A program made the position numbers and the translations under genes. The notes under the pieces were generated by a model. The model was not told the origin of the DNA. It ran no database searches and worked only from the letters and a program-made list of their open reading frames with translations. From NCBI RefSeq assembly GCF_006345805.1, contig NC_043014.1, positions 16,306,001 through 16,370,000 on the forward strand: a stretch of 64,000 nt of DNA. Reading direction: 5' to 3'. Each line of letters opens with the position of its first letter. Positions within the stretch are counted from its first letter, which is position 1. This DNA is from Octopus sinensis. Taxonomy: Eukaryota. This document shows, piece after piece, positions 12,999 through 48,400 of this stretch.

Positions 12999-13001
<3 letters not shown>

Positions 13002-14903: not shown

Positions 14904-14921
14904 AATTTATTATTATTATTA

Positions 14922-14958
<37 letters not shown>

Positions 14959-21784: not shown

Positions 21785-22028
21785 CATCATCATCATCATC
21801 ATCGTTTAACGTCCGTTTTCCGCGCTAGCACGGGTTGGACGGTTTCGACCGGGGTCTGGGGAGCTCGGGACTGCCCCAGGCTCCAGTCTAGTCTGGCAGT
21901 GTTTCTACAGCTGGATGCCCTTCCTAACGCCAACCACTCCGCGAGTTTAGTGGGTGTTTTTTACGTGCCACCTGCACAGGTGCCAGAGGGGTCTGGCATC
22001 GGCCACGTTCGGATGGTGCTTTTTTTAT
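21785..22028 (-). mobile_element. SINE/LINE-tail family D with (ATG)n tail, truncated by the satellite
   Basis: Shares CCGTGCTAGC..GGAAA.CGGACG.TAAA(TGA)n and GGTTGGCGTTAGGAAGGGCATCC with 44100-44353 and 50920-51170. Confidence 0.8.
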
Positions 22029-28000: not shown

Positions 28001-30996
28001 AAAGAGTAGACACCTATAATGGTGGTGGGGAGGGGTGCAGAAATATAGGGGAGACCCAGTGGGAGGGGTGGTTCAGAGGACAGGTTCTAGGCAAGTAGAA
28101 CGTAGGATATCGAGAGAGGGGTAATGCATGGTGAAATAGCGTATTGAAGAGGGGGGTTCAAAGAGTAGACACCTATAATGGTGGTGGGGGGGGTGCAGAA
28201 ATATAGGGGAGCACCAGTGGGAGGGGTGGTTCAGAGGACAGGTTCTAGGCAAGTAGAACGTAGGATATCGAGAGAGGGGTAATGCATGGTGTGAAATAGC
28301 GTATTGAAGAGGGGGTTCAAAGAGTAGACACCTATAATGGTGGTGGGGAGGTGCAGAAATATAGGGGAGCACCAGTGGGAGGGGTGGTTCAGAGGACAGG
28401 TTCTAGGCAAGTAGAACGTAGGATATCGAGAGAGGGGTAATGCACGGTGAAATAGCGTATTGAAGAGGGGGGTTCAAAGAGTAGACACCTATAATGGTGG
28501 TGGGGAGGGGTGCAGAAATATAGGGGAGCACCAGTGGGAGGGGTGGTTCAGAGGACAGGTTCTAGGCAAGTAGAACGTAGGATATCGAGAGAGGGGTAAT
28601 GCATGGTGAAATAGCGTATTGAAAAGGGGGGTTCAAAGAGTAGACACCTATAATGGTGGTGGGGGGTGGCAGAAATATAGGGGAGCACCAGTGGGAGGGG
28701 TGGTTCAGAGGACAGGTTCTAGGCAAGTAGAACGTAGGATATCGAGAGAGGGGTAATGCATGGTGAAATAGCATATTGAAGAGGGGGTTCAAAGAGTAGA
28801 CACCTATAATGGTGGTGGGGGGGGTGCAGAAATATAGGGGAGCACCAGTGGGAGGGGTGGTTCAGAGGACAGGTTCTAGGCAAGTAGAACGTAGGATATC
28901 GAGAGAGGGATAATGTATGGTGAAATAGCATATTGAAGAGGGGGGTTCAAACAGTAGACACCTATAATGGTGGTGGTGGGGGGTGCAGAAATATAGGGGA
29001 GCACCAGTGGGAGGGGTGGTTCAGAGGACAGGTTCTAGGCAAGTAGAACGTAGGATATCGAGAGAGGGGTAATGCATGGTGAAATAGCATATTGAAGAGG
29101 GGGGTTCAAAGAGTAGACACCTATAATGGTGGTGGGGGGGTGCAGAAATAAAGGGGAGCACCAGTGGGAGGGGTGGTTCAGAGGACAGGTTCTAGGCAAG
29201 TAGAACGTAGGATCGAGAGAGGGGTAATGCATGGTGAAATAGCGTATTGAAGAGGGGGGTTCAAAGAGTAGACACCTATAATGGTGGGGGGGGTGCAGAA
29301 ATATAGGGGAGCACCAGTGGGAGGGGTGGTTCAGAGGACAGGTTCTAGGCAAGTAGAACGTAGTAGGATATCGAGAGAGGTGTAATGTACGCTGAAATAG
29401 CGTATTGAAGAGGGGGGTTCAAAGAGTAGACACCTATAATGGTGGTGGGGGGGTCCAGAAATATAGGGGAGCACCAGTGGGGTGGGTGGTTCAGAGGACA
29501 GGTTCTAGGCAAGTAGAACGTAGGATATCGAGAGAGGGGTAATGCATGGTGAAATAGCGTATTGAAGAGGGGGGTTCAAAGAGTAGACACCTATAATGGT
29601 GGTGGGGGGGTGCAGAAATATAGGGGTGCACCAGTGGGAGGGTTGGTTCAGAGGACAGGTTCTAGGCAAGTAGAACATAGGATATCGAGAGAGGGGTAAT
29701 GCATGGTGAAATAGGGTATTGAAGAGGGGGGTTCAAAGAGTAGACACCTATAATGGTGGTGGGGGGGTGCAGAAATATAGGGGAGCACCAGTGGGGGGGT
29801 GGTTCAGAGGACAGGTTCTAGGCAAGTAGAACGTAGGATATCGAGAGAGGGGTAATGCATGGTGAAATAGCGTATTGAAGAGGGGGGTCAAAGAGTAGAC
29901 ACCTATAATGGTGGTGGGGGGGTGCAGAAATATAGGGGAGCACCAGTGGGAGGGGTGGTTCAGAGGACAGTTTCTAGGCAAGTAGAACGTAGGATATCGA
30001 GAGAGGGGTAGGGTATGCATGGTGAAATAGCGTATTGAAGAGGGGGTTTCAAAGAGTAGACACCTATAATGGTGGTGGGGGGGGGTGCAGAAATATAGGG
30101 GAGCACCATTGGGAGGGGTGGTTCAGAGGACAGGTTCTAGGCAAGTAGAACGTAGGATATCGAGAGAGAGGGGTAATGCATGGTGAAATAGCGTATTGAA
30201 GAGGGGGGGTTCAAAGAGTAGACACCTATAATGGTGGTGGTGGGGGGGTGCAGAAATATAGGTGAGCACCAGTGGGGGGGTGGTTCAGAGGACAGGTTCT
30301 AGGCAAGTAGAACGTAGGATATCGAGAGAGGGGTAATGCATGGTGAAATAGCGTATTGAAGAGGGGCGTTCAAAGAGTAGACACCTATAATGGTGGTGGG
30401 GGGGTGCAGAAATATAGGGGAGCACCAGTGGGAGGGGTGGTTCAGAGGACAGGTTCTAGGCAAGTAGAACATAGGATATCGAGAGAGGGGTAATGCATGG
30501 TGAAATAGCGTATTGAAGAGGGGGTTTCAAAGAGTAGACACCTATAATGGTGGGGGGGGGAGCAGAAATATAGGGGAGCACCATTGGGAGGGGTGGTTCA
30601 GAGGACAGGTTCTAGGCAAGTAGAACGTAGGATATCGAGAGAGGGGTAATGCATGGTGAAATAGCGTATTGAAGAGGGGGGTTCAAAGAGTAGACACCTA
30701 TAATGGTGGTGGGGGGGTGCAGAAATATAGGTGAGCACCAGTGGGGGGGTGGTTCAGAGGAGAGGTTCTAGGCAAGTAGAACGTAGGATATCGAGAGAGG
30801 GGTAATGCATGGTGAAATAGGGTATGGAAGAGGGGGGTTCAAAGAGTAGACACCTATAATGGTGGTGGGGGGTGCAGAAATATAGGGGAGCACCAGTGGG
30901 AGGGGTGGTTCAGAGGACAGGTTCTAGGCAAGTAGAACATAGGATATCGAGAGAGGGGTAATGCATGGTGAAATAGCATATTGAAGAGGGGGTTTC
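22029..30996. repeat. ~157-158 bp G-rich tandem satellite, ~57 monomers, open-ended at the gap
   Basis: Monomer is G(n)TGCAGAAATATAGGGGAGCACCAGTGGGAGGGGTGGTTCAGAGGACAGGTTCTAGGCAAGTAGAACGTAGGATATCGAGAGAGGGGTAATGCATGGTGAAATAGCGTATTGAAGAG(n)TTCAAAGAGTAGACACCTATAATGGTGGTG. The anchor CAG recurs at 22038, 22196, 22354, 22511 and 22669. Confidence 0.97.
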
Positions 30997-31096
30997 NNNN
31001 NNNNNNNNNNNNNNNNNNNNNNNNNNNNNNNNNNNNNNNNNNNNNNNNNNNNNNNNNNNNNNNNNNNNNNNNNNNNNNNNNNNNNNNNNNNNNNNN
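30997..31096. other. scaffold gap (100 N)
   Basis: A run of exactly 100 N, typical of a gap of unknown size. Confidence 0.98.
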
Positions 31097-31795
31097 CACC
31101 CGTTTCTGCGGTTGGGGTAACTTTGAATGCCAAAGTTTGGGACAAGACCCTGCAGGATTTTCCAGATGTATATCACCGCCATTCTCTCCCGCCTCTGCTC
31201 TAGGGAGAAGAGGTTTAATACCTTCAGTCTTTCCCAGTAGCTGATATTTTGCATTGAGAAGATCTTCTTTGTGTAGCTTCCTGAATTGCTTCGAGTTCTG
31301 CTGTTAGTTTTAATATTGTGTGGTGACCACAGTTGGGAGCAGTAGTCAAGCGCTGAGGACGAATGTTTTCCATAGGACCATTAGTGTCTCCTTCTCTCTT
31401 GTTCTGAAAGTTCGGAGAATCCATCCAGCTAGCCGTCTGCATTTTATCACCAGATTAGCAATATGCACTTGGAAAGCTGCATCATTGCTCATGTCAATGT
31501 CCAGGTCACGCACTGATTTTGACTCAGGGATTGCAATTCTTCCTGGGCCAGTGTATCCAGTCTGCACGTCGTTTACCTTTGTGTGCCAGTAGGGCAGGGC
31601 CTGGAACTTACCTGCATTAAACTGCATGTTTTTTGTCCTCAGCCCCCCTGTAAGTATTGTGTCCAACTCCTGTTGCAGATACGCAATATTTTCAAGGTTT
31701 TGTATTGCGTGGGAGACTTTTGTGTCATCTGCATAGCTAGCAAGGGTGGTCATCGTAGCAACTGAAGCATGTCTGAAAGGGCCTCTATGAACATC
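31097..31795 (-). mobile_element. CR1 LINE 3' RT fragment (second subfamily)
   Basis: SYADDTKV, QFNAGKF, GWILRTFRTREKET and QNISYWERLKVLNLFSLE motifs. It is the same subfamily as 50141-50660. Confidence 0.85.
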
Positions 31796-31825
31796 TATAT
31801 GTGTGTATATAAGATATATATATAG

Positions 31826-31857
<32 letters not shown>

Positions 31858-32138
31858 AATATATAATATAGTGTGGTGTGTGTGTATTATATGTGTGTGT
31901 GTGCATATATTATATATATATATGTATGTGTGTGTATATATATATATATGTGTGTGTGTGCAATATTATATATATATATATGTGTGTGTATATATATTAT
32001 ATGTGTGTGTGCATATTATGTAATATATATGTGTGTGTATATATATATGTATATATATATATATATATATATGTCTGTTGTTATATATATATATATATAT
32101 GTATGTATATATATATGTATTAATCTATATATATAATG

Positions 32139-32219
<81 letters not shown>

Positions 32220-32260
32220 ATATATATATATGTATGTATATATATATATGTATATATAAA
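31796..32260. repeat. (TA)n/(TG)n compound microsatellite
   Basis: Directly visible. Confidence 0.95.
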
Positions 32261-32492
32261 GGCGGTGACCTGGCAGAAACGTTAGCACGCCGTGCGAAAT
32301 GCGTAGCCGTATTTCATCCGCCGTTACGTTCTGAGTTCAAATTCTGCCGAGGTCGATTTTGCCTTTCATCCTTTCGGAGTCGATAAATAAAGTACCAGTT
32401 ACACACTGGGGTCGATGTAATCGACTTAATCCATTTGTCTGTCCTTGTTTGTTCTCTCTGTGTTTAGCCCCTTGTGGGTAGTAAAGAAATAG
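32261..32492 (+). mobile_element. SINE family A, full length
   Basis: tRNA-like head GGCGGTGACCTGGCAGAAACGTTAGC with a GAGTTCAAATTC B-box, and the tail GTAAAGAAATAG. Confidence 0.9.
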
Positions 32493-32631
32493 GTACTTAA
32501 TTTATTGACTCCAAAAGAATGAAAGGCGAAGTCGATCTTGGCGGAATTTGAACTCAGAACATAAAGACAGACAATAACACCACTAAGCAGCATTTCACCC
32601 GGCGTGCTAACGTTTCTGCCAGCTTCCTGCC
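32492..32631 (-). mobile_element. SINE family A 5' half, tail-to-tail with the previous copy
   Basis: Reverse complement of the family A head. Confidence 0.85.
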
Positions 32632-32686
32632 TTGTGTGTGTGTGTGTGTGTTGTCTACCTTGTGTGTCTACATGTATGCGTTTTAA

Positions 32687-32919
32687 GGCGGCGAGCTGGC
32701 AGAAACGTTAGCACGCAGGGTGAAATGCTTAGCGGTATTTCGTCTGTCGTTACGTTCTGAGTTCAAATTCCGCTGAGGTCGACTTTGCCTTTCATCCTTT
32801 TGGGGTCGATAAATTACATACCAATTATGCACTGGGGTTGATGTAATCGACTTAATCCCTTTGTCTGTCCTTGTTTGTCCCCTCTGTGTGTTTAGCCCCT
32901 TGTGGGCAGTAAAGAAATA
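32687..32919 (+). mobile_element. SINE family A, full length
   Basis: Same sequence as 53-266 and 32261-32492. Confidence 0.9.
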
Positions 32920-33188
32920 TATATGTATGCGTTTGTATGTATGTGCGTGTACGTTGCTTATCTGTGTGTGAATATATATATATATATGTATATATATATG
33001 TATGCTGTGTTTGTGTATATGTATTAGTATGTATATGTGTGTGTGTATGTATGTTGTTTATCTCCTCTGTGTGTGTATGTATGTCTTATGGTTTGTGAGG
33101 TTGGTATAGTGTGTGTGTGTGTGTAAAATATGTGATCGTGGGGTGTGTGTTTATATGTGATTTTTGATATGTGTGTGATCGTTATATG

Positions 33189-33239
<51 letters not shown>

Positions 33240-33289
33240 GCTTTCAACATATAATTAAAATGATACCTGTGGTTAAGTGTTGTCATATA

Positions 33290-33575
33290 TAGGCCTGGGT
33301 CAGCTCTAAACAAGGAGGCTTTTTATGATCAAAAGCAATCCAGCTATGACCATCCCATATTTTTCCCACGGCTGGGAAGAGCCAAGACTATATTTGTCTA
33401 ATGAGAGATACAGTGGTGTGTGATTTGAGGGGAATTTGGTTGCTTTTTCGAGCATGTGATGTGACCACATAAAAGCTCCTTTTGGTATTGTGTGAGTGGA
33501 GATGTTGTTTAGCCCCAGGTCAGTCCTGATGTTCCAGCTGTGACCATCCCAACTTTTATTCAAGCCCATCCCTGC
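33290..33575 (-). mobile_element. old interspersed repeat (family F)
   Basis: Shares AAATCTCCCTCAAATCACA and ATGGTCATAGCTGGATTGCTTTTGATCAT-like motifs with 62930-63330 and 39880-39930. Confidence 0.5.
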
Positions 33576-33834
33576 CAATTAGTCCATTACAAGAATGCTC
33601 ACCATTGAGCACCCTGGGAGCAAACTTGGCGCAAATGTTTGCAACTTCATGAATAATTCTGTGCGCAGGGGCCAATCCCAATCTGTTTGCTTATTGCCTT
33701 TATAGACACACAGACGCATGATTGCCAATTTACCCCAGCCATCTCTGGTGTTCTCATGTCTCTTTCTCCCACTCATACCTCTCATTGTCTCTCCCCTCCT
33801 CTCTGCCAGTCTGGAGCATTTCATAAGGTTTCCA

Positions 33835-35170
33835 TAGCAAGCTTCCAAATTGTCTTCATGTCCTGAACTTCATTCTGCAAACTTGTCAACTGTGACCAGC
33901 CATGTTTAACAGGGTGTGTCCAAATTGCTGTTACAACCTTCTTCTTCAATCTGGAATAACAAAAGTTGGCAGGTCAGCTTATTTAATGTATAATAATAAT
34001 AATAATAATAAAGATATACTGAAATTACAATAACATAAGACAGAACAGAAAATTTCATTGCATAGCAAGCCTCTAAATTGTCTTCATTCTGCAAACTGGG
34101 CAACCACGACATGTCCAAAACTCCTTCAAAGTAGGATCCCCTGACTTTAATACATTTGTTGTAAGTGCTTCAGCTACTTCGTGAAGGCCCCACGGAAGTC
34201 CTCCGAAGGGAAAGGGTCCAGAACCTTGCTCTCTGATGTTTCCAAAGTTCTGCTGTGGCCATCTCCTTCAATCTGGAATAACAAAAGTTGGCTTGTTAGG
34301 TGTACGATAATAAGACAGAACACAAAATTTATTCAGCTGTGACATGCAAAAAAAAAAAAAGAGATGTTTAATGGTTTTGCTGTGATTAGCACAAAATTGT
34401 ATTCCATAAAAAGCTTCCAAACCTCACAGCTACATTCTGGAAACTCAGCAACCATGGCAAGCAGTGTTTATAGCAGGATGTTACCAAATTGCTGTTACAG
34501 CCGCCTTCTTCAATCTGGAACAACAAAAGTTGGCAGGTCAGCTTTATTAAATGTACGATAATGAAATTCCAATAATTTAGGACGGTTAGAATGCAAAACT
34601 CCATTGTGTGGTGAGCTTCCAAATTCCCTTCACATCCTGATTTCATTCTACAAACCAGTCAACTGTAACAAACAGTGTTTTGTAGGATGGGTTCAAAGTG
34701 CTCTAATAGCTGTCTCCTTTAACCCTTTCGTTACCAACCCAGCTGAAACCGGCTCTGGCTCTGAGTACAAATTTCTTGTTTCCATAAGTTTTGAATTAAA
34801 ATCTTCTATCAAACCTCAGTCACAATTTATGTTCCTAACAGTAGCTGAATGATAACTAAGTTATTTTGCTAAATTCTTTGTTATATTTAGAATAATTGAA
34901 AGAAACACAGAGCATCTCAAAATAAATACAGTAATGAAAGGGTTAATATGGAACAACAAAAGTTGGCAGGTCAGCTTATTAGATGTATGATAATGAAATA
35001 CTGAAATTACAATAATTTAGGACAGTTACAAGCAAGCTTCCTACTTGTCTTCACATCACAATTACATTCTACAGATTGGTCAACTGTAACAAAGTGTTTG
35101 AGTTGGGTCTGTTCAGAATGTTGTTTCAGCCATCTGGAACAACAAAAGTTGGCAGGTCAGCTTATTAGCT
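33835..35170. repeat. degenerate tandem repeat, 5 copies of a ~200-300 bp unit with a conserved core
   Basis: The core ATCTGGAAYAACAAAAGTTGGCAGGTCAGCTT (partly truncated in one copy) occurs at about 33949, 34270, 34514, 34947 and 35132. Flanking motifs are also shared. Confidence 0.8.
34723..34942. mobile_element. piggyBac-type MITE (220 bp)
   Basis: TTAA at 34719-34722 and 34943-34946. TIRs are CCCTTTCGTTAC / GTAATGAAAGGG (11/12 complementary). Confidence 0.85.
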
Positions 35171-36044: not shown

Positions 36045-36194
36045 ATTATTATTATTATTTTTATTTTTAAGCTGTATCTGTATCTATAGTTTGTTATTGG
36101 TGTTTTTTGTTTTAATTTTTGCTTTTAAATGATTTCTTTTTGTCCTTCATCAGCTAAAATATCTAATCATTCCTCCTTTTTCTATTCTTTCCAG

Positions 36195-38167
36195 GTAATG
36201 GAGGCTGGCAAGACGACCCTACCCAAGTGGTTGTATTTCGACGTTGAGACTCGTACCTTCTCTGGAGTCCCGAAACCAGCAGACATCGCCCAGTATTACA
36301 TCGAGGTTGTGGCGCAGGCTGAGGACCAAGGAGCTGTTAGTCAGTTCGCCAAAGACGTCTTCTCGATTCATGTGACCAAAGAAAGCTTGAAACCCACCAC
36401 TGTGGCGGCAGCAGCAGCAGCAGCAATCAGTGGTTCATCATCAAAGAAGAACGGCAAGGGTTCAAATTCTCCACCAGTCATCCGATGCATGCCCCAGGAG
36501 CCAGAGACAGCATTTACGCTAATTGTTGATGCAGACCTTGATCAACTTCCTCCCCACGGCATTGTGGGACTGTTAAAGAAACTGGAGCACAATCTGGAGC
36601 TTGTGTCTGAGATGTTTAAGGTCGGTCCTGCCACCACTGGCAACAGGCCCATCCCTCCTGTCCATGCAGTCGCCCCAGACACATCGTCCTCATCCACCCT
36701 TGAATCAGGGCCCGGTGACACAAAAATCGCAAAACACCCCGGGGTGCTTGTCACATGGCTGGTTGGTTGTGGCCGAGTGGAGCTGCAGCACATGAACGTT
36801 CTACAGAGGGTGGAATCAATTTCAGCAAATGGCACCTTGTCCGAGCTCCTCGGTCATGGAGTTGTAGGGTGGCATGTGACAAACAGACAAGTAACCCTGC
36901 CTGAGAAGAGAGTAAGGCGTGCAGCCATCATGGCCACCCCGGCTGTCACTGACATTGCACCGACGCGCACCCACCTGCATTCGCACAAGACCCACCACCG
37001 ACATACAGATGGAATGGCCATCAGCATGCCCGAATATTGCAGTCGCGCAAGAAAGCTAAAACCACGAATAGCACACAGGATTCCTGTACAGGAATTCGAG
37101 GCCGGGAAGCGAGCCTACTTCTCTGTGCCATCTGACACGTTCATTGACTGCAAGGAGCCCAGCGACCGCTTGACGCTGGCATTTTTCCTTAAGCAACTCC
37201 CTCCCAACATTTGGCTGCAGCGAGACCCGGCCAATAACAAAAGCATAATTGGGCTTCCAATGGAAAGCAATGTGGGCATCCTCAACGTGACAGTGGTGGC
37301 GATAAACAGTGATGGAAAGTTCAACAACATGGACTTCCTCGTGAAGGTTCTGAAGAACAAGAACCTCAAGAGCAACAAGGTAACCCACAAGATCAAGATG
37401 AAGTTCAGTATGGAGTACAAGAAGTTCATGTCAAACCTCGACTCGAGGCTCAATCTCATTGACAAGATAGGCAAATTGTACGGAGACGCAGATGCGAGCA
37501 GCGTCACAGTGCTCGAAATAACAGAGGGGTCCGTGGAGGTGTCGTGGACAAACAACACTCTCGTCGGCACAAAATGCCCCGATGATGCTACCAAAGCCCT
37601 TTTTGAATGCCTAGTTGATGACAAAAAGCGGGTGAAACGTTCAGCAAGGAAAGCAATGAAACCTTTCAAGCTGCAATCGGCCCAAATAATCCCGATGGGA
37701 GCTTGTGCTGGGGTCTATATCAACCCAATGCCGAGCACCACAATGGTAGCATCAACAACACCAGAACTCAATATCAACCCAATGCTGGACACCACAATGG
37801 CAGCAGCAACAACACCAGAACTCAAACCACAGTCTGATGATGAGAACGTTATTCTTATTTCAACCATTGTCCTTGATGTCACCATCGTGTCCATATTGCT
37901 TCTGGCCCTGCTCATTACTTGCATCCGTTACCGAAAGAGTCGGAGAGAAAAGATGTCGCTCTCGTCTGCCGGCGAGGGCACCCAGTTGATCCCGAACCAG
38001 ACCGAAGAAGAGGTGGGCATCGCAGAAACGGTGGAGTAAACGAACCCTTACTCGGCTCGCAACCGTATGAGCCACCACCTCCTGTCACTGCGTCGCAGGG
38101 CAAGAAACAGCCGCGCCCCCACGTGCAACCCCCCTACACATCACCTCCTCCATATGTGCCTCCATAA
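36195..38167 (+). CDS. DAG1: dystroglycan-like gene, large second coding exon (frameshift before the PPxY tail; possible pseudogene or paralog)
   Basis: Acceptor TTTCCAG|GTA, phase 0. The order is cadherin-like domain (LPKWLYFD..TFSGVP), N2 domain (TLIVDADL, SGPG, WLVGC), furin site RVRR, ATPAVT, second cadherin-like domain (VPSDTF, IGLP), SEA domain (ITEG/SVEVSWTNNTL), TM and basic stop-transfer. The TSPPPYVPP* end is in the -1 frame (ORF 37919..38167). The upstream exon was not found. Confidence 0.9.
37719..37826 (+). repeat. 54-bp in-frame tandem duplication in the juxtamembrane stalk
   Basis: INPMPSTTMVASTTPELN / INPMLDTTMAAATTPELK, with units starting at 37719 and 37773. Confidence 0.9.
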
Positions 38168-38479
38168 GTTCATTGCTGAAGTGTAATTACATATATAACT
38201 GTATGTATATATGTATGTATGTATGTATACTTATACATATATAACGTATGTGTGTGTGCGTATATATGATATACACTTGTGTTCTATTCACTATATATTT
38301 ATTTATATACATGAATATATATGTATATATATATTTATATATATATCACAAATATATATTATATGTATATATATATATACACACACACATATACATATGT
38401 ATATATGTATATACATACATATATCACACATTTGTAATATGCATGTGTATACACGTATATTTACACACTAAACGCATAC

Positions 38480-38532
<53 letters not shown>

Positions 38533-38786
38533 GTGTGTGTGTGTGTGTGAGTGTGTGTTTTATGTAAAGTTCTACCACTGTTCAATCAACCAAAAATACT
38601 AACTAATAACCCAAAGGCCCTTTGCCCTGTCCTCCTGCTCCAGAGGCCCGTACCCAATGCTCTCCCCCCTTCTTTATAAAAACAAAAAAAAAATCATTGA
38701 CAAAAACAAACAAAGAACATTCACAAAAATTCAAAGCAAAAAACTGAACAATAACATCAACATTTTAGAAATGTAACAGTTTATAA

Positions 38787-38867
38787 AATTATACAAGATA
38801 CACATGTATATATATACAAACAAACACACATCTACATGTATATATATCTATATATATATATCTTATG

Positions 38868-38927
<60 letters not shown>

Positions 38928-39074
38928 CTGTGTACATGACTATAAATGTGTGTTGTGTGTGTGTATAGAAGGATATTTGTATATACATGAGAACTTTTAT
39001 GCGTAATATATACATGTGAATATATAGACATATGCAAATATATGTGTGAGTGTTTGTACATATATATATATATG

Positions 39075-39127
<53 letters not shown>

Positions 39128-40554
39128 GATGTGCCTAATCATTTGATTAGAAAACTTACAGTTCAAAAACGGTAAAGAACTCAATACTATTTTAAAGTGT
39201 CTACTGTCTGTATATATATATATGTGTGTGTTTGTGTGTCTGTGTTTGTCCCCCTAGCATTGCTTGACAACCGATGCTGGTGTGTTTACGTCCCCGTCAC
39301 TTAGTGGTTCGGCAAAAGAGACCGATAGGATAAGTACTGGGCTTACAAAGAATAAGTCCCGGGGTCAATTTGCTCGACTAAAGGCAGTGCTCCAGCATGG
39401 CCGCAATCAAATGACTGAAACAAGTAAAAGAGTAAAGAGTAAATTGAGCTCAAAATTAGCATGGAATCAGCATATTTGGAATTTTGTTTATTCCCTCTCT
39501 CTGTTTTAATGTATAGAGAGGGAGGTCCAATTTTTACCTAGTGGATATTCTTGTACATGTAAATTTCATTTTTCTTTGAAGAATATTGGCCAAATTTCAC
39601 CAATAAAAATCATATTATGCAATGAATATTATTTTGTAGACTATTAAAGTCCGATGTGATGTTTTTTTTCTCCCCAATTTTAAATACAGTCAGATAATCT
39701 GTAGTAGTGTTTATATTTTCACAAGTAGGTCTGATTTGTTTTGGGGTTTTTCTCTCACACCTACTAACAAGTTTGCTGCAAGTTACAGATGTTTTTAATG
39801 CTAAAAACAAGAAATTAGTTTTCACATTTTGTTTTTTTTTAATCTAAGTCTACATGCAATTTTGAGAAAAGTAGTAGGTGGTTGTGGGATGTGCTAGGAA
39901 CAACAGCTAAATCTCCCTTTAATCACATCTTTTCGTTTGAAAATATTGTCAATCCTCCCCCCACCCCACAAGTCTTCTCCCATTGTTTTTAAAGGCTTAA
40001 TTTTAAAAAAAGCCAAAATTGGTCCAGGAAGGTGAAGGGGGAGATCATAAATTTTCAAAAGTTCTTTTCATAAAAAGCTTCCCACCATTATTTCCAAGGT
40101 TGTGATGAAAAAAAAAATGGAAAAATCCTCATCAAAATGGAGAAAATCCAACTTATGTGGGCATCCTGATCCAAAACTCTACTGTTTATAGCCATTTTTA
40201 ATTGTCCATTAAAATTTAATTGAAGTAGTATCATGTTCCAAAATCTCGGGATTCATTTAGTTCTATACCTACCACAAATGTGCCCCTTCTGGATTGAACT
40301 TTGGGATTTAATAAGGTCTGAAAACCTCATGAAATCAGCTGGTTGTTACATGCAAAAAAATAGGCTTTACGTAAATATTTTTAAAAACTGCTGAAACAAA
40401 AATTTCATTATCAAGAACTAGCAAATAAAAAGAAAAAAGGCAACTGCTATGCCATGGACACTATTAATTTGTATATGATTATCACCTCAGTTTCAAAGAT
40501 ATGACATTACAAATATGGCTAATTATTCATTTAGACTTAATTGGGCAAGATTTC
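38787..40554. repeat. left arm of long inverted repeat
   Basis: Reverse complement of 41536-43624 along its whole length, apart from scattered SNPs and one ~330-bp deletion. It contains the 3' half of a SINE B. Confidence 0.95.
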
Positions 40555-40757
40555 AACCAATTTGCTGACCATTCCAATTGTCATATTTCCTCAAATATTC
40601 ATCTAAATTTCACAAATGTTTCTTTGGATGTTCTCCAAAGAAAGGTACGGTTTACATATTTTCAAAAATTCATAGTGATGCCTACTACAAAAGTTAGGAA
40701 ACAATTTTGTTAAAGCAAGTCAAAGCACAATAATACAAATATAAAAGCAGGACTCAC

Positions 40758-41484
40758 ATTTTTATAGCAGTATCCATTCTACCTAAATTTTCTTTGGGAT
40801 AAACTGTCAATTTACTTCCATCAGCATCTCCAAGTCCAACATTATGTCCCTGTCTCGCCATCATGTTTTCTGTTGATGGTGAAGAGACCATCATGGAAGG
40901 TGATGACACCAACATTTTATTTGATAAAGCCACATCTTCTGGTGACATACGTGAGTCTTTTGGATAGAACAATTCATTGGAGATAGAATCCACTATGCCA
41001 TTTTGATTCAGTACCTGACTTTCTAAAGAGCATGACAACATCTTATCATAGGATCCAACAAAAGTATCTTCATATATTAAATTGTCATTCTGGTTTGACC
41101 CCTTTCCTGACAAATCTTGATATTCATATTTAATCATCTGAGGATCAATAAGGCTAGATGTGAGTGAATATTGCTTAGCATTCAGTAAAAGAGCTTTATT
41201 TGACTCTTCATTAAGGTCCATCATTTTCTGATTATGGTTATCTGATGGCAGAGAGTGTCTTCTGTCTATAAGTGTTTCATAATTAGGCCGGTTAGTCAAT
41301 ACTTGATGGTTGTCACTGTTAACTGAATGCACCTGATCAGAACCTGATTCATATGTAGCACGAACAGAACCTAGGTACTGGTGGTGTTGAGCATTATCTG
41401 TAAGAGAGTGATGGCTACGGTCCTGCACCCCATCATTGTAACTAGAATGGTTATCTAACAACTGATGTCCCGAGGGTTGGTGAT
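40758..41484 (-). CDS. exon-like ORF segment of an unidentified gene (727 nt, ~242 codons, S/N/D/H-rich)
   Basis: Stop-free, complex-composition frame inside ORF 40754..41575. There is a strong donor AAT|GTGAGT at 40757. The acceptor TAG|ATC at 41485 is weak and A-rich. No family was recognised. Confidence 0.6.
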
Positions 41485-41535
41485 CTATCAATATTATTAT
41501 TATGAACATTATTATTATTATGCTTTTTTTTTTAA

Positions 41536-43309
41536 GAAATCTTGCCCAATTAAGTCTAAATGAATAATTAGCCATATTTGTAATGTCATATCTTTGAAAC
41601 TGAGGTGATAATCATATACAAATTAATAGTGTCCATGGCATAGCAGTTGCCTTTTTTCTTTTTATTTGCTAGTTCTTGATAATGAAATTTTTGTTTCAGC
41701 AGTTTTTAAAAATATTTACGTAAAACCTATTTTTTTGCATGTAACAACCAGCTGATTTCATGAGGTTTTCAGACCTTATTAAATCCCAAAGTTCAATCCA
41801 GAAGGGGCACATTTGTGGTAGGTATAGAACTAAATGAATCCCGAGATTTTGGAACATGATACTACTTCAATTAAATTTTAATGGACAATTAAAAATGGCT
41901 ATAAACAGTAGAGTTTTGGATCAGGATGCCCACATAAGTTGGATTTTCTCCATTTTGATGAGGATTTTTCCTTTTTTTTTTCATCACAACCTTGGAAATA
42001 ATGGTGGGAAGCTTTTTATAAAAAAAACTTTTGAAAATTTATGATCTCCCCCTTCACCTTCCTGGACCAACTTTGGCTTTTTTTAAAATTAAGCCTTTAA
42101 AAACAATGGGAGAAGACTTGTGGGGTGGGGGGAGGATTGAAAATATTTTCAAACGAAAAGATGTGATTAAAGGGAGATTTAGCTGTTGTTCCTAGCACAT
42201 CCCACAACCACCTACTACTTTTCTCAAAATTGCATGTAGACTTAGATTAAAAAAAAACAAAATGTGAAAGCTAATTTCTTGTTTTTAGCATTAAAAACAT
42301 CTGTAACTTGCAGCAAACTTGTTAGTAGGTGTGAGAGAAAACCCCCAAAACAAATCAGACCTACTTGTGAAAATATAAACACTACTACAGATTATCTGAT
42401 TATATTTAAAATTGGGGAGAAAAAAAACATCACATCGGACTTTAATAGTCTACAAAATAATATTCATTGCATAATATGATTTTTATTGGTGAAATTTGGC
42501 CAATATTCTTCAAAGGAAAATGAAATTTACATGTACAAGAATATCCACTAGGTAAAAATTGGACCTCCCTCTCTATACATTAAAACAGAGAGAGGGAATA
42601 AACAAAATTCCAAATATGCTGATTCCATGCTAATTTTGAGCTCAATTTACTCTTTACTCTTTTACTTGTTTCAGTCATTTGACTGCGGCCATGCTGGAGC
42701 ACCGCCTTTAGTCGAGCAAATCGACCCCGGGACTTATTCTTTGTAAGCCCAGTACTTATCCTATTGGTCTCTTTTGCCGAACCACTAAGTGACGGGGACG
42801 TAAACACACCAGCATCGGTTGTCAAGCAATGCTAGGGGGACAAACACACACACACAGACATATATATATATATACATATATACGACGGGTTTCTTTCAGT
42901 TTCCGTCTACCAAATCTACTCACAAGGCATTGGTCGGCCCGGGGCTATAGCAGAAGACACTTGCCCAAGATGCCACGCAGTGGGACTGAATCCGGAACCA
43001 TGTGGTTGGTTAGCAAGTTACTTACCACACAGCCAGTCCCCAATTATGTTAATACACACATGCATGCATCTATGTATGAGTGTGTGTATATATATATATA
43101 TGCATGCATACACATACATATATGGAGATGCCTGTATGTATGTATGTATGTATGTATATATATATATATATATTAACACGTATGCATGTGTATATGTACA
43201 TATGTATATGTGTGTGTATATATATATATACAGACAGTAGACACTTTAAAATTGTATTGAGTTCTTTACCGTTTTTGAACTGTAAGTTTTCTAATCAAAT
43301 GATTAGGCA

Positions 43310-43368
<59 letters not shown>

Positions 43369-43495
43369 AACACTCACACATATATTTGCATATGTCTATA
43401 TATTCACATGTATTTATTACGCATAAAAGTTCTCATGTATATACCAATATCCTTCTATACACACACACAACACACATTTATAGTCATGTACACAG

Positions 43496-43533
<38 letters not shown>

Positions 43534-43624
43534 ATATATATACATCACATAAGATATATATATATATATATACATGTAGATGTGTGTTTGTGTGTATATA
43601 TATACATGTATATCTTGTATAATT
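41536..43624. repeat. right arm of long inverted repeat (contains a full SINE B, minus strand, ~42650-43040)
   Basis: Reverse complement of 38787-40554. The ORF track shows mirrored ORFs (39264/42580, 39610/42264, 38789/43080). Confidence 0.95.
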
Positions 43625-44099
43625 GTATGGACTTATCCCCATTGACTTTTTTATCCAAATAAAGCAAAAAAAAAAAGAAGTTCTCTTAATGGCTTTCATT
43701 CTCAACACAAATCGAGTTATTGGGCTCTAGTGCAGTCAAAAACAAAAAATGGGACAAACTGTGAATGGGTGGAAATATGAGTGTGATTGAGGGAATCTGA
43801 CATGATAAGTAAGTGTTGGATTTTAATCAAAGGTATAAGAGAAGAAAGTTCACATCTATAACTTTCAAGTAATATATAATTGTCTGTGGAAAGAATGCAT
43901 TTTGACGTGAAAATAGTCAAGCAAAAAGTGGGCTTTTGCTTGGTCAAATTATGCTTGTCTCCCTTTTATGGAGCCCTTTAGTGATACCTATTTATTGACA
44001 GAAATATTGAATGTGAGCTTAGTTATGCAATATCAGAAACAGAAAAGACCGATAAAAGGAGCTCACTTTTTTGTGTACTTTTGTAAATAGTAGGGTACT

Positions 44100-44410: not shown

Positions 44411-44457
44411 ATTATGTATATATGTATGTATACATATATATGTATATATATATATGA

Positions 44458-44517
<60 letters not shown>

Positions 44518-44660
44518 GTGTGTATACATATATATATATGTATGTATATATATGTGTATGTATATATATATATATATATGTATAAATAAATGTATGTATA
44601 TATATATGTATAAATAAATGTATGTATATATATATGTGTAAATAAATGTATGTATATATG

Positions 44661-44702
<42 letters not shown>

Positions 44703-44791
44703 AATGTATGTATATATATATGTATGTATATATATATGTCTATATATATGTATGTATATATGTATATATATATATGTATGTATATATGTAT

Positions 44792-44832
<41 letters not shown>

Positions 44833-45120
44833 TGTATGTATATATATATGTATGTATATATGTATGTATATGTATATATATGTATGTATATATGTATGTA
44901 TGTATATGTATGTACGTATGTATATATATGTATGTATATATATATGTATGTATATATGTATGTATATATATATGTATGTATATATATATGTATATATATA
45001 TGTATGTATATATATATATATGTATATATATATGTATATATATATATGTATGTATATATATATACGTATATATATATATGTATGTATATATATATATATA
45101 CGTATATATATATATGTATG

Positions 45121-45160
<40 letters not shown>

Positions 45161-45200
45161 TGCATATATGTTTGTTTATATATGTATGTATATATATTTA
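44354..45200. repeat. (TA)n/(TATG)n compound microsatellite
   Basis: Directly visible. Confidence 0.95.
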
Positions 45201-45338
45201 TAGATCAATAAATGGTGGGGTTGTGTTGACCGCACGTGGAGAAATGATAAGCAAGGAAAAATTGTAAAAATGTAGAATGCTCAAATGAAAGAAAAATTTA
45301 ATGAAATGAGAAATTGATAAAATATATAAATATATATT

Positions 45339-45454: not shown

Positions 45455-48400
45455 CAATAGAACCCCGTCTAATATGTGGCACTTGGTGAAGAATGGAGTT
45501 TGATATAGCTACTCTCATTTGCACCTCTTGCCGTGAGGTAGGTTCATCTGGGACTCTCGACAGGAAGATGTCCAGCTTTTATTTAAAAACTGCTACATCT
45601 ACTTTGTGCAAGTTCCTCATACTCTTTGGGAGAATATTAAAAAGCTGTGGGCCCTTGAAACCCAGGCTGTTGCAGAAGCTGGTCCTGAAGTGTGATGGCA
45701 TTGCTGGGATATTTGGCACTATGTAGTGTCGTCCCGTTCTAGCATTGGTGTAGCTTACAATGCCAAAATTTGGCACAATTCTTTCCAGGATCATCCAGAC
45801 ATGTATTACTGCATACCTCTCCTGTCTTCTCTCCAGGGAGTAGAGTCTTAGCTGTTTCAACCTTTCCCAGTAGCTGAGCTATTGCAAAGAGACGATCTTC
45901 TTTGTGAATCTTCTCTGGATTGCTTCAAGGTCCGCTGTTAATTTTACACTGGTGGGTGACCATAGCTATGAGCAGTAATCCAGGCGGCTGAGGACGAATG
46001 TCCACCAGAGGACCATCATAGTTTCCTTATCTCTGGTTCTGAATGTTCTCAGGATCCACCCAGTCAGTCGTCTGCACTTTGTCGCCATCCTGGTAATGTG
46101 CACTTGGAAAGAGGTATCATCACTCATGTCGATACCCAGGTCCCTCACAGACTTAGGCTCTGGGATTGAAATTCCCTGTGGACCGGTGTATCCTGTAAGT
46201 TTAATATTCAGTTTTGGATGCTGGTAGAGCAGGGCCTGGAATTTTTCAGCATTAAACTGCATATTATTATCCTCAGCCCATCTGTAGATTGAGTCCAACT
46301 CCTGCTGCAGGTGTGCAACATCACTGGGGTTCTGTATTTTCTGCGAGACTTTCGTATCGTCTGCATAGCTGGCCTGAGTGGCTATCCGGGAATTTGAGGG
46401 CATATCTGAGAGGGCCACTATAAAAAGCAGCGGTCCCAAGACAGTGCCCTGTGGAACACCGCTCACTATTTGTGTGTTCATAGAGGTGGCTCCATTAACC
46501 ACTACTGCCTGACTCCTATCTTTCAGGAAGTCATGTAACCACACTCCAAGATTTCCAGCTATGCCGAGGTCATGCAGTTTGTGGCATATCATACCATGAT
46601 CCACCTTGTCGAAAGCTTTTGCAAAATCAAGGTAGATTACGTCCACATTTGATTTGTTGAGTAACTGCCTCAACACCCAGTCATAATGTTGTAAGAGCTT
46701 GGTCAGGCAGCTCCTACCTGGTCGAAAACAATGCTGGGTATCACTCAGCAAGTTATCTTCCTCAAGGAATGCGATTAGTTTCTTTCTGACTATCCGTTCC
46801 ATGACTTTGCTGATGTGTGAAGTCAGAGAGATAGGCCTATAGTTTTTGGCATCTGTTCTACTTCCCCCTTTATGTATTGGGCATATTATTCCCTCCTTCA
46901 GCTTGCTTGGCAGTTTGCTATTCGCAAGAAAGCTCTGGAAGAGAATCTTGAGGGGTTTTGCCAGGGCATGCTTACATGCTTTGAGGAGGATGGCTGGGAA
47001 ACCATCTGGACCAGCAGCTGAGTTTGCGTCCACTTCATCTATGGCTAGTAGGACATCTTTTTCGCTTATGTCAATACATTCTATTGTAACCGCCTCGCTG
47101 GTTATGGATGAGGCGGCAAAGAAGTCCACTGGTTCGTTCACTTGTCTGTGTTCCAACGGTGTGGTAAAGACACTTTTCAACTGGTCATTCAGCATCTCAC
47201 TGATCTTAGTTGGACTGTCTGTGAGGGAGCCATCCTTTTGGAGGAGGGGTCCTATCTTGTAGTGCACTGAGACTGTTTCTTTCACGTAATGAAAGAAGGC
47301 CTTTGGGTTTGATTTAATATTTTTTATAACCCAGGCTTCTTTGTCTGCTTTCTCCTTCACATAGGATTGTTGCTGCCTTTTTTCGATCTCCATCAGTGTT
47401 GTTTTTAGGCGGGACGTTTCGTTACTTTTGGGATGTAGGTTGAGACGATTTGCAACCTTCGTCCGTTGTTTCATGAGGATCTTCCTGTCTCTTGGAATCT
47501 TGCTCCTATTTGTTTTGGCCTTGTGCTCTGGGACATATTTCTGGCATACGGCTTGCACAGAAGACATGAAACATTCTAGTTTCATGTCAATATCTAGTGT
47601 GAAGAGACATTCCAGCCAGTCCCCTCTGAGGATCTCTTTTTGGATCGATTTCCAATCTGCTTTATGGAAGTTCAGATTGGAGAGATTTCGGGTGCTTCCT
47701 TTAGGCTGTGTGTCTCTGGTTACTTTTGGCCCAAACATAGACAGCTGTATTATGTTGTGATCCGAAACTGATGTTGGTTTCACTTTCACATCATGAATGA
47801 TGTCCGTATTGTTCATGAAGCAGAGATCCAGAATGTTATTCGCCCTAGTTGGCTTGAGTACAACTTGCTCCATGAATAAGGCATTGGTGAGGTTGAGCAG
47901 GGACTCAAGCTTTACTTGCTTGCAATGATTCATTCCTGAGAGTATGTGACCTTCGGGCCATTTGACGTTGGAGAAGTTGAAATCACCCATAAGAAATATG
48001 GTCACGTGGTGTTCCAGATTCATGAGGATTTCTTTAATTCTTGTGAGGCAATCTTCAAACTTGCCTGTGTGATTTGGGGCATCCGGTGGGCAATATGTAT
48101 TGCATATGACTATATTATGTTGTCTTACGTATACAGTTAAAGTGTCACATACCGAATTTGCGTATGTCATTAAGACCTGGGGTGTGAGGTCATCTCGGGT
48201 GTATACAGCAACTCCACCATGGCTCCTTTCCCTTCTGTCTGTTCGCAGTATGGCATAGTTTGGTATGTGTACTTCTGCGTCCTCTATATCAGGGTTGAGG
48301 TGAGTTTCTACAAGTGCTATGCATAGGGCTTGATTGCATGCAGTAAGATCTCTCAGGAAAGAAATTTTGTTTCTCTTTTGATGTAACAGGCCCCCAATAT

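What the first reader, a model, noticed from the sequence alone, without database searches (positions are those of the whole stretch)
38787..43624. A coding exon sits in the ~1-kb loop of a 4.8-kb near-perfect fold-back
Seen: arms 38787-40554 and 41536-43624 are reverse complements made of ordinary intronic DNA (microsatellite, SINE, unique), with no TSD. The right arm stops ~50 nt from the exon start. Known: long inverted intronic repeats around an exon promote back-splicing or exon skipping and create ADAR substrates. Two readings follow. (a) It is a functional circRNA/hyper-editing cassette. (b) It is a fold-back inverted duplication that broke the exon, since the acceptor is A-rich and the upstream bases read KHNNNNVHNNN one frame away.
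Basis: partly seen in the sequence, partly recalled or inferred. Interest (0 to 1): 0.75.

Follow-up and report, generated by a model that had tools for sequence, protein, structure and literature searches.

The report
Broken duplicate exon inside inverted duplication
The 4.8-kb fold-back in this octopus chromosome is real, but the "exon" in its loop is a cut-off spare copy of part of a nuclear-receptor gene that sits intact on another chromosome, so this is most likely a scar of DNA rearrangement and not a working RNA device.

Summary
The arms are 38783-40554 and 41536-43628, the loop is 981 nt, and the unique 1,325 nt of the arms is 98.8% complementary. The window is Octopus sinensis CM016876.1. 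An independent Octopus vulgaris assembly has the same structure, with arm-specific differences shared between the two species, so it is not an assembly artefact.

The loop "exon" (41484->40758, minus strand) is a 5'-truncated DNA-level duplicate of the first coding exon (A/B domain) of an NR1-type nuclear receptor, annotated "nhr-48". The intact 182-kb gene lies on another chromosome. Homology to that parent starts exactly at 41484, inside a parent exon that has no intron there, so the "acceptor" is a breakpoint next to a 51-nt AT-rich filler.

The left arm plus the loop are colinear with their sources: the exon and its downstream intron at the inner end, and the 3' flank of a dystroglycan-like duplicate at the outer end. 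The right arm has novel junctions at both ends, so it is the secondary inverted copy. This fits a fold-back-type inverted duplication with a 930-nt spacer.

The copy appears to evolve near-neutrally. Two local paralogous loci have deleted the centre, exon included. Reading (b) is largely right. Reading (a) is unsupported, but no RNA data could be tested. Interest is low to moderate.

The parts
36129..38039 (+). Context: dystroglycan-like (DAG1-like) paralogue ORF of 636 codons. Its cytoplasmic tail is frameshifted; the canonical ...PPPYVPP end reads in the +1 frame to about 38164.
   Evidence: Pfam DAG1, a_DG1_N2 and He_PIG; homologues P0003-P0008; +1 frame translation.
38040..38782 (+). 3' flank of the DAG1-like duplicate. 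It runs seamlessly into the left arm.
   Evidence: One BLAST HSP, window 37969-38918 = L006 32748-33644 (true DAG1 locus of O. vulgaris), crosses the arm boundary at 38783.
38783..39210 (+). Left arm, segment A: microsatellite-rich DNA derived from the DAG1 3' flank.
   Evidence: Window 38804-39228 = L006 33666-34052 at 87.6%. It pairs with 43219-43628 at about 92%.
39211..39440 (+). Left arm: 3' part of an octopus SINE (5' half missing).
   Evidence: Matches many dispersed SINE copies at 88-96%. The right arm holds the full-length element.
39441..40554 (-). Left arm, segment I2: copy of the nuclear-receptor intron downstream of the exon. It is contiguous with the loop, as in the parent gene.
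   Evidence: Window 41484->39440 = L005 10314->12372 at 95.9% in one HSP. It is seamless across 40554/40555.
40555..40757 (-). Loop: first 203 nt of the parent intron (I1), including the inherited 5' splice site GTGAGT (40757-40752).
40758..41484 (-). Loop: 5'-truncated copy of the first coding exon (A/B domain) of the nhr-48-like nuclear receptor, equivalent to residues 106-337. The first 105 codons, including the ATG, are missing. RefSeq annotates it as orphan LOC118766938.
   Evidence: phmmer E=1.3e-132 to P0019; tblastn over residues 106-337 only; 15 differences in 723 nt from the O. vulgaris parent exon; annotation P0001/P0002.
41485..41535 (-). 51-nt AT-rich filler at the junction between the spacer and the inverted copy. 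Its last two bases supply the fortuitous AG 'acceptor'.
   Evidence: No homology to the parent sequence upstream of L005 10314; 43% pyrimidines in the 30 nt before the AG.
41536..42649 (+). Right arm: secondary inverted copy of intron segment I2.
   Evidence: Window 41536-42649 = L005 11255-12372 at 94.7%, in the opposite orientation to the exon. 98.8% complementary to the left arm.
42650..43039 (-). Right arm: full-length SINE, absent from the parent intron at this site.
   Evidence: About 386-nt matches to other SINE copies. The parent reads unique sequence after L005 12372.
43040..43628 (-). Right arm: microsatellite plus A', the inverted copy of the DAG1 3' flank. It keeps about 80 nt more of that flank than the left arm does.
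   Evidence: Window 43135-43607 = L006 34130-33666, reversed, 88.2%. It pairs with 38783-39222.
43630..44098 (+). Right flank I4: a further piece of the same parent intron, in the same orientation as the right-arm I2. The junction with A' is novel.
   Evidence: Window 43630-44098 = L005 12701-13168 at 94.2%; junction sequence.

Best explanation
The structure is a fixed rearrangement scar in a duplication-rich stretch of an Octopus sinensis chromosome. A DNA-level duplicate of part of an NR1-type nuclear-receptor gene (annotated nhr-48) came to lie next to the 3' flank of a dystroglycan-like duplicate, with a SINE at the join. The duplicated piece was the first coding exon plus at least 2.9 kb of the downstream intron. 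A break inside the exon copy, at codon 105, was then repaired by a fold-back-type inverted duplication. About 930 nt (the rest of the exon plus 203 nt of intron) stayed single-copy as the spacer. A 51-nt filler was added. The adjoining about 2 kb (intron segment, SINE, DAG1 flank) was copied in inverted orientation to make the right arm. The exon's donor site is inherited; its apparent acceptor is the breakpoint. The piece has no start codon, no promoter of its parent and no partner exons nearby, and it drifts almost neutrally. If transcribed, the arms would form a very stable long double-stranded RNA, but nothing indicates a selected function. Shown here: the sources of every segment, the exact breakpoints, that the left arm is the original, the age relative to speciation, and the central deletion in paralogues. 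Inferred: the fold-back mechanism and the lack of function.
For: Identity and reality: the window is 100% identical to O. sinensis CM016876.1. The O. vulgaris orthologous locus from an independent ONT/10x/Omni-C assembly has the same arms and 981-nt loop. Orthologous arms differ by 0.38-0.45%, but the two arms of one species differ by 1.21-1.74%, with 11 arm-specific sites shared by both species.

Source of the exon: the loop ORF matches residues 106-336 of P0019 (O. sinensis nhr-48 isoform X2) at E=1.3e-132. The intact gene spans 182 kb on the 174-Mb chromosome of the same assembly. Only this exon is found in the 64-kb window.

Breakpoint: homology to the parent locus L005 starts exactly at 41484 (parent ...GGATACTC|ATCACC, window ...ATTGATAG|ATCACC). 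The parent exon is one uninterrupted 347-codon ORF.

Left arm is the original: exon, I1 and I2 form one 2,067-nt HSP with the parent, and the outer end is continuous with the DAG1 3' flank as in the true DAG1 locus. The right arm has a filler at its inner end and a novel A'|I4 junction at its outer end.

Drift: there are 15 differences in 723 nt from the parent (5 synonymous, 10 non-synonymous, omega 0.52). Polarised with O. bimaculoides and Argonauta, 7 amino-acid changes fall on the copy lineage and 2 on the parent.

Dispensability: two local paralogous loci carry the same 2,080-bp central deletion, which removes the exon, with AATAG microhomology at the junction.

Precedent: human fold-back inverted duplications have single-copy spacers of 766-70,466 bp, and 5 of 21 junctions carry inserted sequence (PMC3907307).
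Against: A single fold-back does not explain why the new arm ends next to parent-intron segment I4 in the same orientation as the right-arm I2. An earlier inversion or a multi-switch replicative event is needed. No outgroup genome with the pre-duplication arrangement could be examined. RefSeq and the O. vulgaris annotation both call a small protein-coding gene on the fragment, and I could not check whether RNA evidence supports it. The ORF is still open over 242 inherited codons, and omega for the copy lineage rests on very few substitutions. The O. sinensis/O. vulgaris pair is too close (0.3-0.45%) to detect constraint.
Confidence: 0.82

Rival explanations
1. Same structural scar, different mechanism. 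The inverted copy arose in one multi-template-switch replicative event (MMBIR/FoSTeS, chromoanasynthesis-like), or by an inversion with staggered breaks. It did not arise by intrastrand fold-back at a double-strand break.
For: The right side reads I2 - SINE - A' - I4. That is colinear with the parent intron, except that 328 nt are replaced by DAG1-flank DNA, which is easier to obtain with several template switches. A 51-nt non-templated-looking filler sits at one junction. The region holds three DAG1-like copies in both orientations within 260 kb.
Against: The SINE and DAG1 flank are shared by both arms, and the left arm is seamless at both ends. The arm unit therefore existed before it was copied, as in a two-step history. 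The staggered-break model would have to recreate the DAG1 flank continuity at 38783 by coincidence.
Confidence: 0.3
2. Functional RNA cassette. The locus is transcribed, and the arms pair across the exon to drive back-splicing (a circRNA) or exon skipping, or to serve as an ADAR hyper-editing substrate or hairpin-RNA (endo-siRNA) precursor.
For: The arms would pair very stably as RNA: duplex energy about -2,310 kcal/mol over 1,325 nt, longest perfect run 246 bp. The inherited 5' splice site is intact. The structure has been retained in two species. A gene model exists on the fragment.
Against: The acceptor is a breakpoint with a poor pyrimidine tract, and it is not inherited. No other exon of the gene lies within 64 kb. 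The arms derive from intron, SINE and intergenic DNA, so small RNAs would have no exonic target. The arms diverge freely with no concerted evolution. Paralogues deleted the centre. The only transcript-derived relatives found are of the parent type. There are no Rfam hits.
Confidence: 0.05
3. A young protein-coding gene. The truncated A/B-domain ORF (146-182 aa from the internal Met MMDL) is expressed and maintained, for instance as a modulator of the parent receptor.
For: RefSeq LOC118766938 and an O. vulgaris model both exist. The ORF is intact in both species, with 1 difference in 822 nt.
Against: One difference in 822 nt is what the neutral 0.3-0.45% divergence predicts. Seven of nine polarised amino-acid changes fall on the copy lineage. 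With only about 10 substitutions on that lineage, an open frame is expected by descent. Pfam finds no domain. The two annotations disagree on structure.
Confidence: 0.06
4. Assembly or haplotype artefact, such as a chimeric palindromic long read or inverted haplotig.
For: Long-read assemblies sometimes create palindromes. A 100-N gap lies 7.7 kb to the left.
Against: The same structure is in a second species assembled with different technology. There are 11 arm-specific fixed differences shared across species. The loop is 981 nt and not zero. Derived versions exist at two paralogous loci.
Confidence: 0.01
5. A foldback or long-TIR DNA transposon that captured an exon.
For: Long terminal inverted repeats flank a central ORF.
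Against: There is no target-site duplication. The left arm continues seamlessly into the DAG1 flank. The other copies share the same flanks, so they are segmental duplicates. The central ORF is a receptor A/B exon and not a transposase.
Confidence: 0.02

Closest known systems
Fold-back (snap-back) inverted duplications with a single-copy spacer, as in human inv-dup rearrangements (Hermetz et al. 2014, PMC3907307)
   Same: There are two inverted copies separated by a short single-copy spacer that is contiguous with the original copy. The 930-nt spacer falls within the reported 766-70,466 bp range. Sequence is inserted at the spacer/inverted-copy junction, as in 5 of their 21 junctions. One arm is colinear with its flank and the other has novel junctions.
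   Different: The duplicated arm here is only about 2 kb, interstitial and fixed in two species, not megabase-sized and terminal. No terminal deletion or dicentric product is visible. The outer junction lands next to a related intron piece (I4), which a single fold-back does not predict.
Exon-flanking inverted intronic repeats that promote back-splicing, such as Alu pairs around circRNA exons (own knowledge: Zhang et al. 2014 Cell; Liang and Wilusz 2014 Genes Dev)
   Same: Long complementary sequences lie on both sides of an exon-like segment that has an intact 5' splice site.
   Different: The 3' splice site is a rearrangement junction, the exon is an orphan fragment with no host gene in the window, and the arms are one duplication and not two independent repeat insertions.
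Hairpin-RNA (hpRNA) endo-siRNA loci of Drosophila formed by inverted duplication of gene fragments (own knowledge: Okamura et al. 2008; Wen et al. 2015)
   Same: A young inverted duplication derived from a protein-coding gene, with near-perfect arms of more than 1 kb.
   Different: The paired arms are intronic, SINE and intergenic DNA, and the exon sits in the unpaired loop. Any siRNAs would therefore not match the parent mRNA. No small-RNA evidence was available.
Duplicated gene fragments or unprocessed pseudogene pieces in segmental-duplication clusters
   Same: A DNA-level copy that keeps intron sequence, is truncated, lies on another chromosome among other duplicated pieces (DAG1-like copies), evolves near-neutrally, and is mis-annotated as an orphan gene.
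   Different: It is embedded in the centre of a 4.8-kb near-palindrome.
Central asymmetric deletions that stabilise long palindromes (own knowledge: Akgun et al. 1997 Mol Cell Biol)
   Same: The two paralogous loci lost 2,080 bp spanning the symmetry centre, with 5-nt microhomology. This left shorter arms (about 860 nt) and a 718-nt spacer.
   Different: This was seen here as an evolutionary outcome in paralogues and not in a transgene assay.

Membership tests
Fold-back inverted duplication with spacer | Two copies of one segment in inverted orientation. | tested here: met
   Arms 38783-40554 and 41536-43628; 98.8% identity in the unique part.
Fold-back inverted duplication with spacer | A single-copy spacer that is contiguous with one (original) copy, as in the source sequence. 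| tested here: met
   Exon, I1 and the left-arm I2 form one 2,067-nt HSP with the parent locus and are seamless at 40554/40555.
Fold-back inverted duplication with spacer | Microhomology or inserted bases at the spacer/inverted-copy junction. | tested here: met
   A 51-nt filler at 41485-41535 with no parent homology. Compare with the insertion junctions in PMC3907307.
Fold-back inverted duplication with spacer | The original arm continues into its ancestral flank; the new arm ends in a novel junction that the model explains. | tested here: inconclusive
   The left arm is continuous with the DAG1 flank. The right arm ends in a novel junction, but next to parent-intron segment I4 in a matching orientation, which a one-step fold-back does not predict.
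circRNA / back-splicing cassette | Complementary repeats in both flanks of the exon. | tested here: met
circRNA / back-splicing cassette | The exon has genuine 3' and 5' splice sites within a transcribed multi-exon gene. | tested here: not met
   The 5' splice site is inherited. The 3' 'site' is the duplication breakpoint inside a parent exon that has no intron there. No other exon of the gene lies in the window.
circRNA / back-splicing cassette | Back-splice junction reads, RNase R resistance. | not testable with these tools
   No RNA read data were accessible.
hpRNA / endo-siRNA locus | A long, near-perfect hairpin. | tested here: met
   Duplex energy about -2,310 kcal/mol; perfect runs up to 246 bp.
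hpRNA / endo-siRNA locus | Arms homologous to the mRNA of a target gene. | tested here: not met
   The arms are nuclear-receptor intron, SINE and DAG1 3' flank. The exon lies in the loop.
hpRNA / endo-siRNA locus | 21-23-nt small RNAs from the arms. | not testable with these tools
   No small-RNA data were accessible.
Foldback / TIR DNA transposon | Target-site duplication, and copies with unrelated flanks. | tested here: not met
   No target-site duplication. The other copies, L003 and L004, share both flanks. The genome-wide copy number could not be searched.
Processed pseudogene (retrocopy) | Intronless, with a poly(A) tail at the 3' end. | tested here: not met
   The copy keeps 1.3 kb or more of the parent intron directly after the donor.
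Functional exon of the nhr-48-like nuclear-receptor gene | Lies in the gene, in order with the DNA-binding and ligand-binding exons, and is complete. | tested here: not met
   The gene is on a different chromosome (174 Mb against 55 Mb). The copy lacks codons 1-105.

The most novel reading that the evidence does not exclude
The fragment is not inert. Read-through or local transcription would give a roughly 1.3-2 kb near-perfect hairpin RNA, and/or a truncated A/B-domain peptide from LOC118766938. The octopus would use one of these as an ADAR or Dicer substrate or as a modulator of the parent nuclear receptor. That would make this a very young regulatory locus caught soon after its birth by inverted duplication. 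A related unexcluded possibility is that recombination between the arms flips the loop, giving an orientation polymorphism in populations.
Probability: 0.06. Interest if true: 0.55.

Novelty: new member of a known kind. Interest (0 to 1): 0.25.

Why it matters
The main value is as a correction and a clean case study. It shows that an "exon in a hairpin loop", annotated as an orphan protein-coding gene in two octopus genomes, is a truncated duplicate whose apparent splice acceptor is a rearrangement junction. Every segment of the 4.8-kb near-palindrome can be traced to a source locus: nuclear-receptor intron, SINE, and dystroglycan 3' flank. The history can also be ordered: dispersal, then inverted duplication, then local segmental duplication with central deletion, then speciation. 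That makes it a rare naturally fixed example of a fold-back-type duplication and of palindrome-centre deletion in an invertebrate genome. It also warns that such fragments can draw mis-mapped RNA reads from the parent gene in studies of cephalopod RNA editing or circRNAs.

Tried and rejected
1. The loop exon as an inverted cytoplasmic-tail exon of the neighbouring dystroglycan-like gene. I raised this because Pfam DAG1 covers only profile positions 3-181 of 290. I rejected it because the canonical tail (...PPPYVPP) lies directly after the ORF on the + strand in the +1 frame (compared with P0005-P0008), and the loop ORF is a nuclear-receptor A/B exon.

2. Strong sequence conservation of the loop between O. 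sinensis and O. vulgaris (1 difference in 822 nt, 3 in 981) as evidence of constraint. I rejected this because orthologous arms differ by only 0.38-0.45%, so the loop is not significantly slower.

3. Concerted evolution or gene conversion between the arms. I rejected this because the tree is ((sinL,vulL),(sinR,vulR)), with 11 shared arm-specific sites.

4. "Insertion in the right arm". Reinterpreted as a deletion in the left arm, because the right arm has the complete SINE and about 80 nt more of the DAG1 flank.

5. The paralogue structure (ABC-B'A') as ancestral. I rejected this as unparsimonious, because segment C is parent-intron DNA contiguous with the exon, so the exon-less form is a deletion.

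6. Searches that found nothing: Pfam on the loop ORF; Rfam and tRNA scans of the region; a literature search for the locus names; tblastn for other receptor exons in the window.

7. Technical problems. The first protein search missed the parent, and only the exhaustive HMMER search found it. P0019 was not on record for locus look-up, so P0140 and P0145 were used instead. The L004 file never reached the scripting machine, so it was read by probes and by eye.


Full report
**Observation.** The inverted repeat is real and lies at the stated place. The repeat finder reports arms 39206-40124/41965-42883 (919 nt, 97%) and 40109-40554/41536-41981 (446 nt, 100%), separated by 981 nt. A gapped alignment extends the arms to 38783-40554 and 41536-43628. 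The unique part (39229-40554 against 42860-41536) has 16 mismatches and one 1-nt indel in 1,325 nt. The microsatellite-rich outer part is about 92% identical. The right arm is about 340 nt longer. The loop (40555-41535) carries a 273-codon ORF on the minus strand. It has a GTGAGT donor at 40757-40752 and an AG 51 nt from the right arm.

**Where the window comes from, and whether the structure is an artefact.** A 20-kb locus fetched through the annotated protein is 100% identical to the window. The window is therefore Octopus sinensis GCA_006345805.1, chromosome CM016876.1, and window position x equals record position x + 16,306,000.
- The orthologous O. vulgaris locus (L002, OX597833.1) is colinear with the window and has the same arms and a 981-nt loop.
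- That assembly was built from ONT, 10x and Omni-C data from a different species (PMC10700109). The O. sinensis assembly is PacBio plus Hi-C, according to a title cited in the same paper.
- In a four-way alignment, orthologous arms differ by 0.45% and 0.38%, whereas the two arms within a species differ by 1.21% (O. sinensis) and 1.74% (O. vulgaris). Eleven sites show an arm-specific state shared by both species.
- The duplication is therefore real and roughly three to four times older than the species split. The arms have not been homogenised since.

**What the "exon" is.** The word-indexed protein search found only two orphan annotations: O. sinensis LOC118766938 (146 aa) and an O. vulgaris hypothetical protein (182 aa). 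Both start at an internal Met.
- The exhaustive HMMER search found the source. Query residues 2-242 match residues 106-336 of P0019 at E=1.3e-132.
- P0019 is [quoted passage not shown]. It is an NR1-type receptor: its ligand-binding domain is closest to Rev-erb and its DNA-binding domain to PPAR/RAR among solved structures. The matched region is the A/B domain just upstream of the zinc-finger domain.
- The intact gene spans 182 kb on the 174-Mb chromosome of the same assembly, not on the 55-Mb chromosome of the window.
- tblastn of the full receptor against the window finds only residues 106-337.
- In O. vulgaris the parent exon is an uninterrupted 347-codon ORF beginning with the ATG (L005 10001-11044).
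- Homology between copy and parent begins exactly at window 41484. The parent reads ...GGATACTC|ATCACCAACCC and the window reads ...ATTGATAG|ATCACCAACCC.
- The apparent acceptor is therefore the breakpoint of a duplication that cut the exon at codon 105. The 51 nt between it and the right arm (41485-41535) are AT-rich filler with no counterpart in the parent. The donor, by contrast, is inherited.

**Anatomy of the arms.** On the minus strand, one 2,067-nt HSP (95.9%) joins the exon, the rest of the loop (I1, 203 nt of intron) and the inner 1.1 kb of the left arm (I2, to 39440) to the parent locus, L005 10314-12372. It shows no discontinuity at the inner edge of the left arm.
- The right arm 41536-42649 matches the same parent segment (L005 11255-12372) in the opposite orientation.
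- Next in both arms comes an octopus SINE that is absent from the parent at that site. It is full length in the right arm (42650-43039) and truncated in the left (39211-39440).
- The outer segments A and A' (38783-39228 and 43135-43628) derive from the 3' flank of dystroglycan. In the true DAG1 locus of O. vulgaris (L006), this sequence follows the gene, and the alignment runs through the left arm's outer boundary without a break.
- The ORF at 36129-38039 immediately to the left is a dystroglycan-like paralogue.
- Beyond the right arm, 43630-44098 is again parent-intron DNA (L005 12701-13168), in the orientation of the right-arm I2.
- So the left arm plus loop are colinear with their sources at both ends, while the right arm has novel junctions at both ends. 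The right arm is the secondary copy.

**Is the fragment under selection?** Copy and parent exon differ at 15 of 723 nt: 5 synonymous and 10 non-synonymous, omega 0.52. The non-coding parts differ at 40 of 1,340 aligned positions.
- Polarised with O. bimaculoides and Argonauta hians proteins, seven amino-acid changes fall on the copy lineage and two on the parent lineage. This points to relaxed constraint on the copy, though the counts are small.
- The O. sinensis and O. vulgaris copies differ at 1 of 822 nt, and the loops at 3 of 981. That matches the neutral 0.4% seen in the arms, so it carries no signal.
- A long open frame in DNA of about 32-33% G+C is expected here by recent descent from a real exon. 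It is not evidence of function (inference).
- The only transcript-derived (Logan) relatives retrieved are parent-type sequences.

**Paralogous loci.** Two further dystroglycan-like copies lie within 260 kb on the same chromosome.
- Both carry the left arm up to window 40363 joined directly to the right arm from 42444, at an identical junction (CAAAAAAATAG|TCTACAAAAT) with AATAG microhomology. This is a 2,080-bp deletion of the palindrome centre, exon included.
- Segment C is parent-intron DNA contiguous with the exon, so the exon-less form is the derived one.
- At the arm-specific sites, the paralogue copy carries a mixture of left-type and right-type states and is equidistant (1.41%) from both arms. 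That fits a split soon after the inverted duplication formed.

**Mechanism.** The features are those of a fold-back-type inverted duplication: an original copy, a single-copy spacer contiguous with it (930 nt of inherited sequence), inserted bases at the spacer/inverted-copy junction, and an inverted copy. In human cases the spacers measure 766-70,466 bp and 5 of 21 junctions carry insertions (PMC3907307).
- I infer that a break inside the duplicated exon was repaired by intrastrand priming about 0.93 kb back, which copied the intron segment, the SINE and the DAG1 flank.
- One thing is not explained: why the new arm ends against parent-intron piece I4 in a matching orientation. This calls for an earlier inversion with a breakpoint in the parent's 328-nt segment (L005 12373-12700), or for a multi-switch replicative event (notebook).
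- The order of events from divergence levels is: dispersal of the receptor fragment (about 3% from the parent), then inverted duplication and local segmental duplication (1.2-1.7%), then speciation (about 0.4%).

**Functional readings.** If transcribed, the unique arm parts would pair with about -2,310 kcal/mol and with perfect runs up to 246 bp. That would be an obvious ADAR or Dicer substrate. Against a selected role:
- the acceptor is accidental and pyrimidine-poor (43%);
- no partner exons are nearby;
- the arms are intron, SINE and intergenic DNA, so siRNAs would have no mRNA target;
- the arms drift apart freely;
- paralogues lost the centre;
- no Rfam family or tRNA gene is present;
- no paper mentions the locus.

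Transcription, editing and back-splicing remain untested, because no read data were accessible.

**Verdict.** Reading (a) is unsupported. This is a new instance of known kinds of event (fold-back inverted duplication, orphan gene fragment, palindrome-centre deletion). It is of modest interest as a well-resolved natural example and as an annotation correction.

Noticed in passing
window 22028-30996 (gap about 30997-31096): A 157-bp satellite of about 57 copies with 95% matches, G+C 0.50 and a strong GC skew (+0.59). It ends at a 100-N assembly gap.
   Followed up: partly
window 36129-38164; loci L003, L004, L006: The dystroglycan-like ORF has lost the mucin-like region and most of the cytoplasmic region relative to full-length cephalopod DAG1. 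A 1-nt deletion also puts the canonical ...PPPYVPP end out of frame. Three such paralogues lie within 260 kb on one chromosome, one of them flagged 'LOW QUALITY PROTEIN'. The full-length O. vulgaris DAG1 is on another chromosome.
   Followed up: partly
window about 3900-15500: An array of repeated LINE reverse-transcriptase 3' fragments alternating with long AAT/ATT-type microsatellites (poly-N/poly-I ORFs). Mariner-like transposase pieces lie at 3188-3481 and 16017-16346. Long LINE ORFs lie at 18231-20573 (+) and 45966-48170 (-).
   Followed up: no
L004 about 33790-34610: A near-perfect palindrome of about 830 bp, with its centre near 34195, is inserted in the TA microsatellite of the paralogue's A' segment. 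It is absent from the window.
   Followed up: no
L003 about 30385-33470: In this paralogue, the centre-deleted inverted-repeat unit is itself tandemly duplicated with a period of about 1,159 bp.
   Followed up: partly
window 40840-40869 (minus strand); parent P0145 vs P0019: A 30-nt in-exon segment (VSSPSTENMM) is spliced out in receptor isoform X2 but kept in X1, so it behaves as an exitron. The RefSeq model of the orphan copy (146 aa over a 471-nt range) appears to omit the same 10 residues, which suggests the model was guided by parent-derived evidence.
   Followed up: partly
window 44413-45213: An 800-nt TA/CA-rich microsatellite that scores as many overlapping 75%-complementary palindromes. 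This is low-complexity sequence and not a second fold-back.
   Followed up: no
protein search tools: The word-indexed protein search with the 242-aa exon missed the 96%-identical parent receptor P0019, although P0019 is in that collection. Only the exhaustive HMMER search found it.
   Followed up: no
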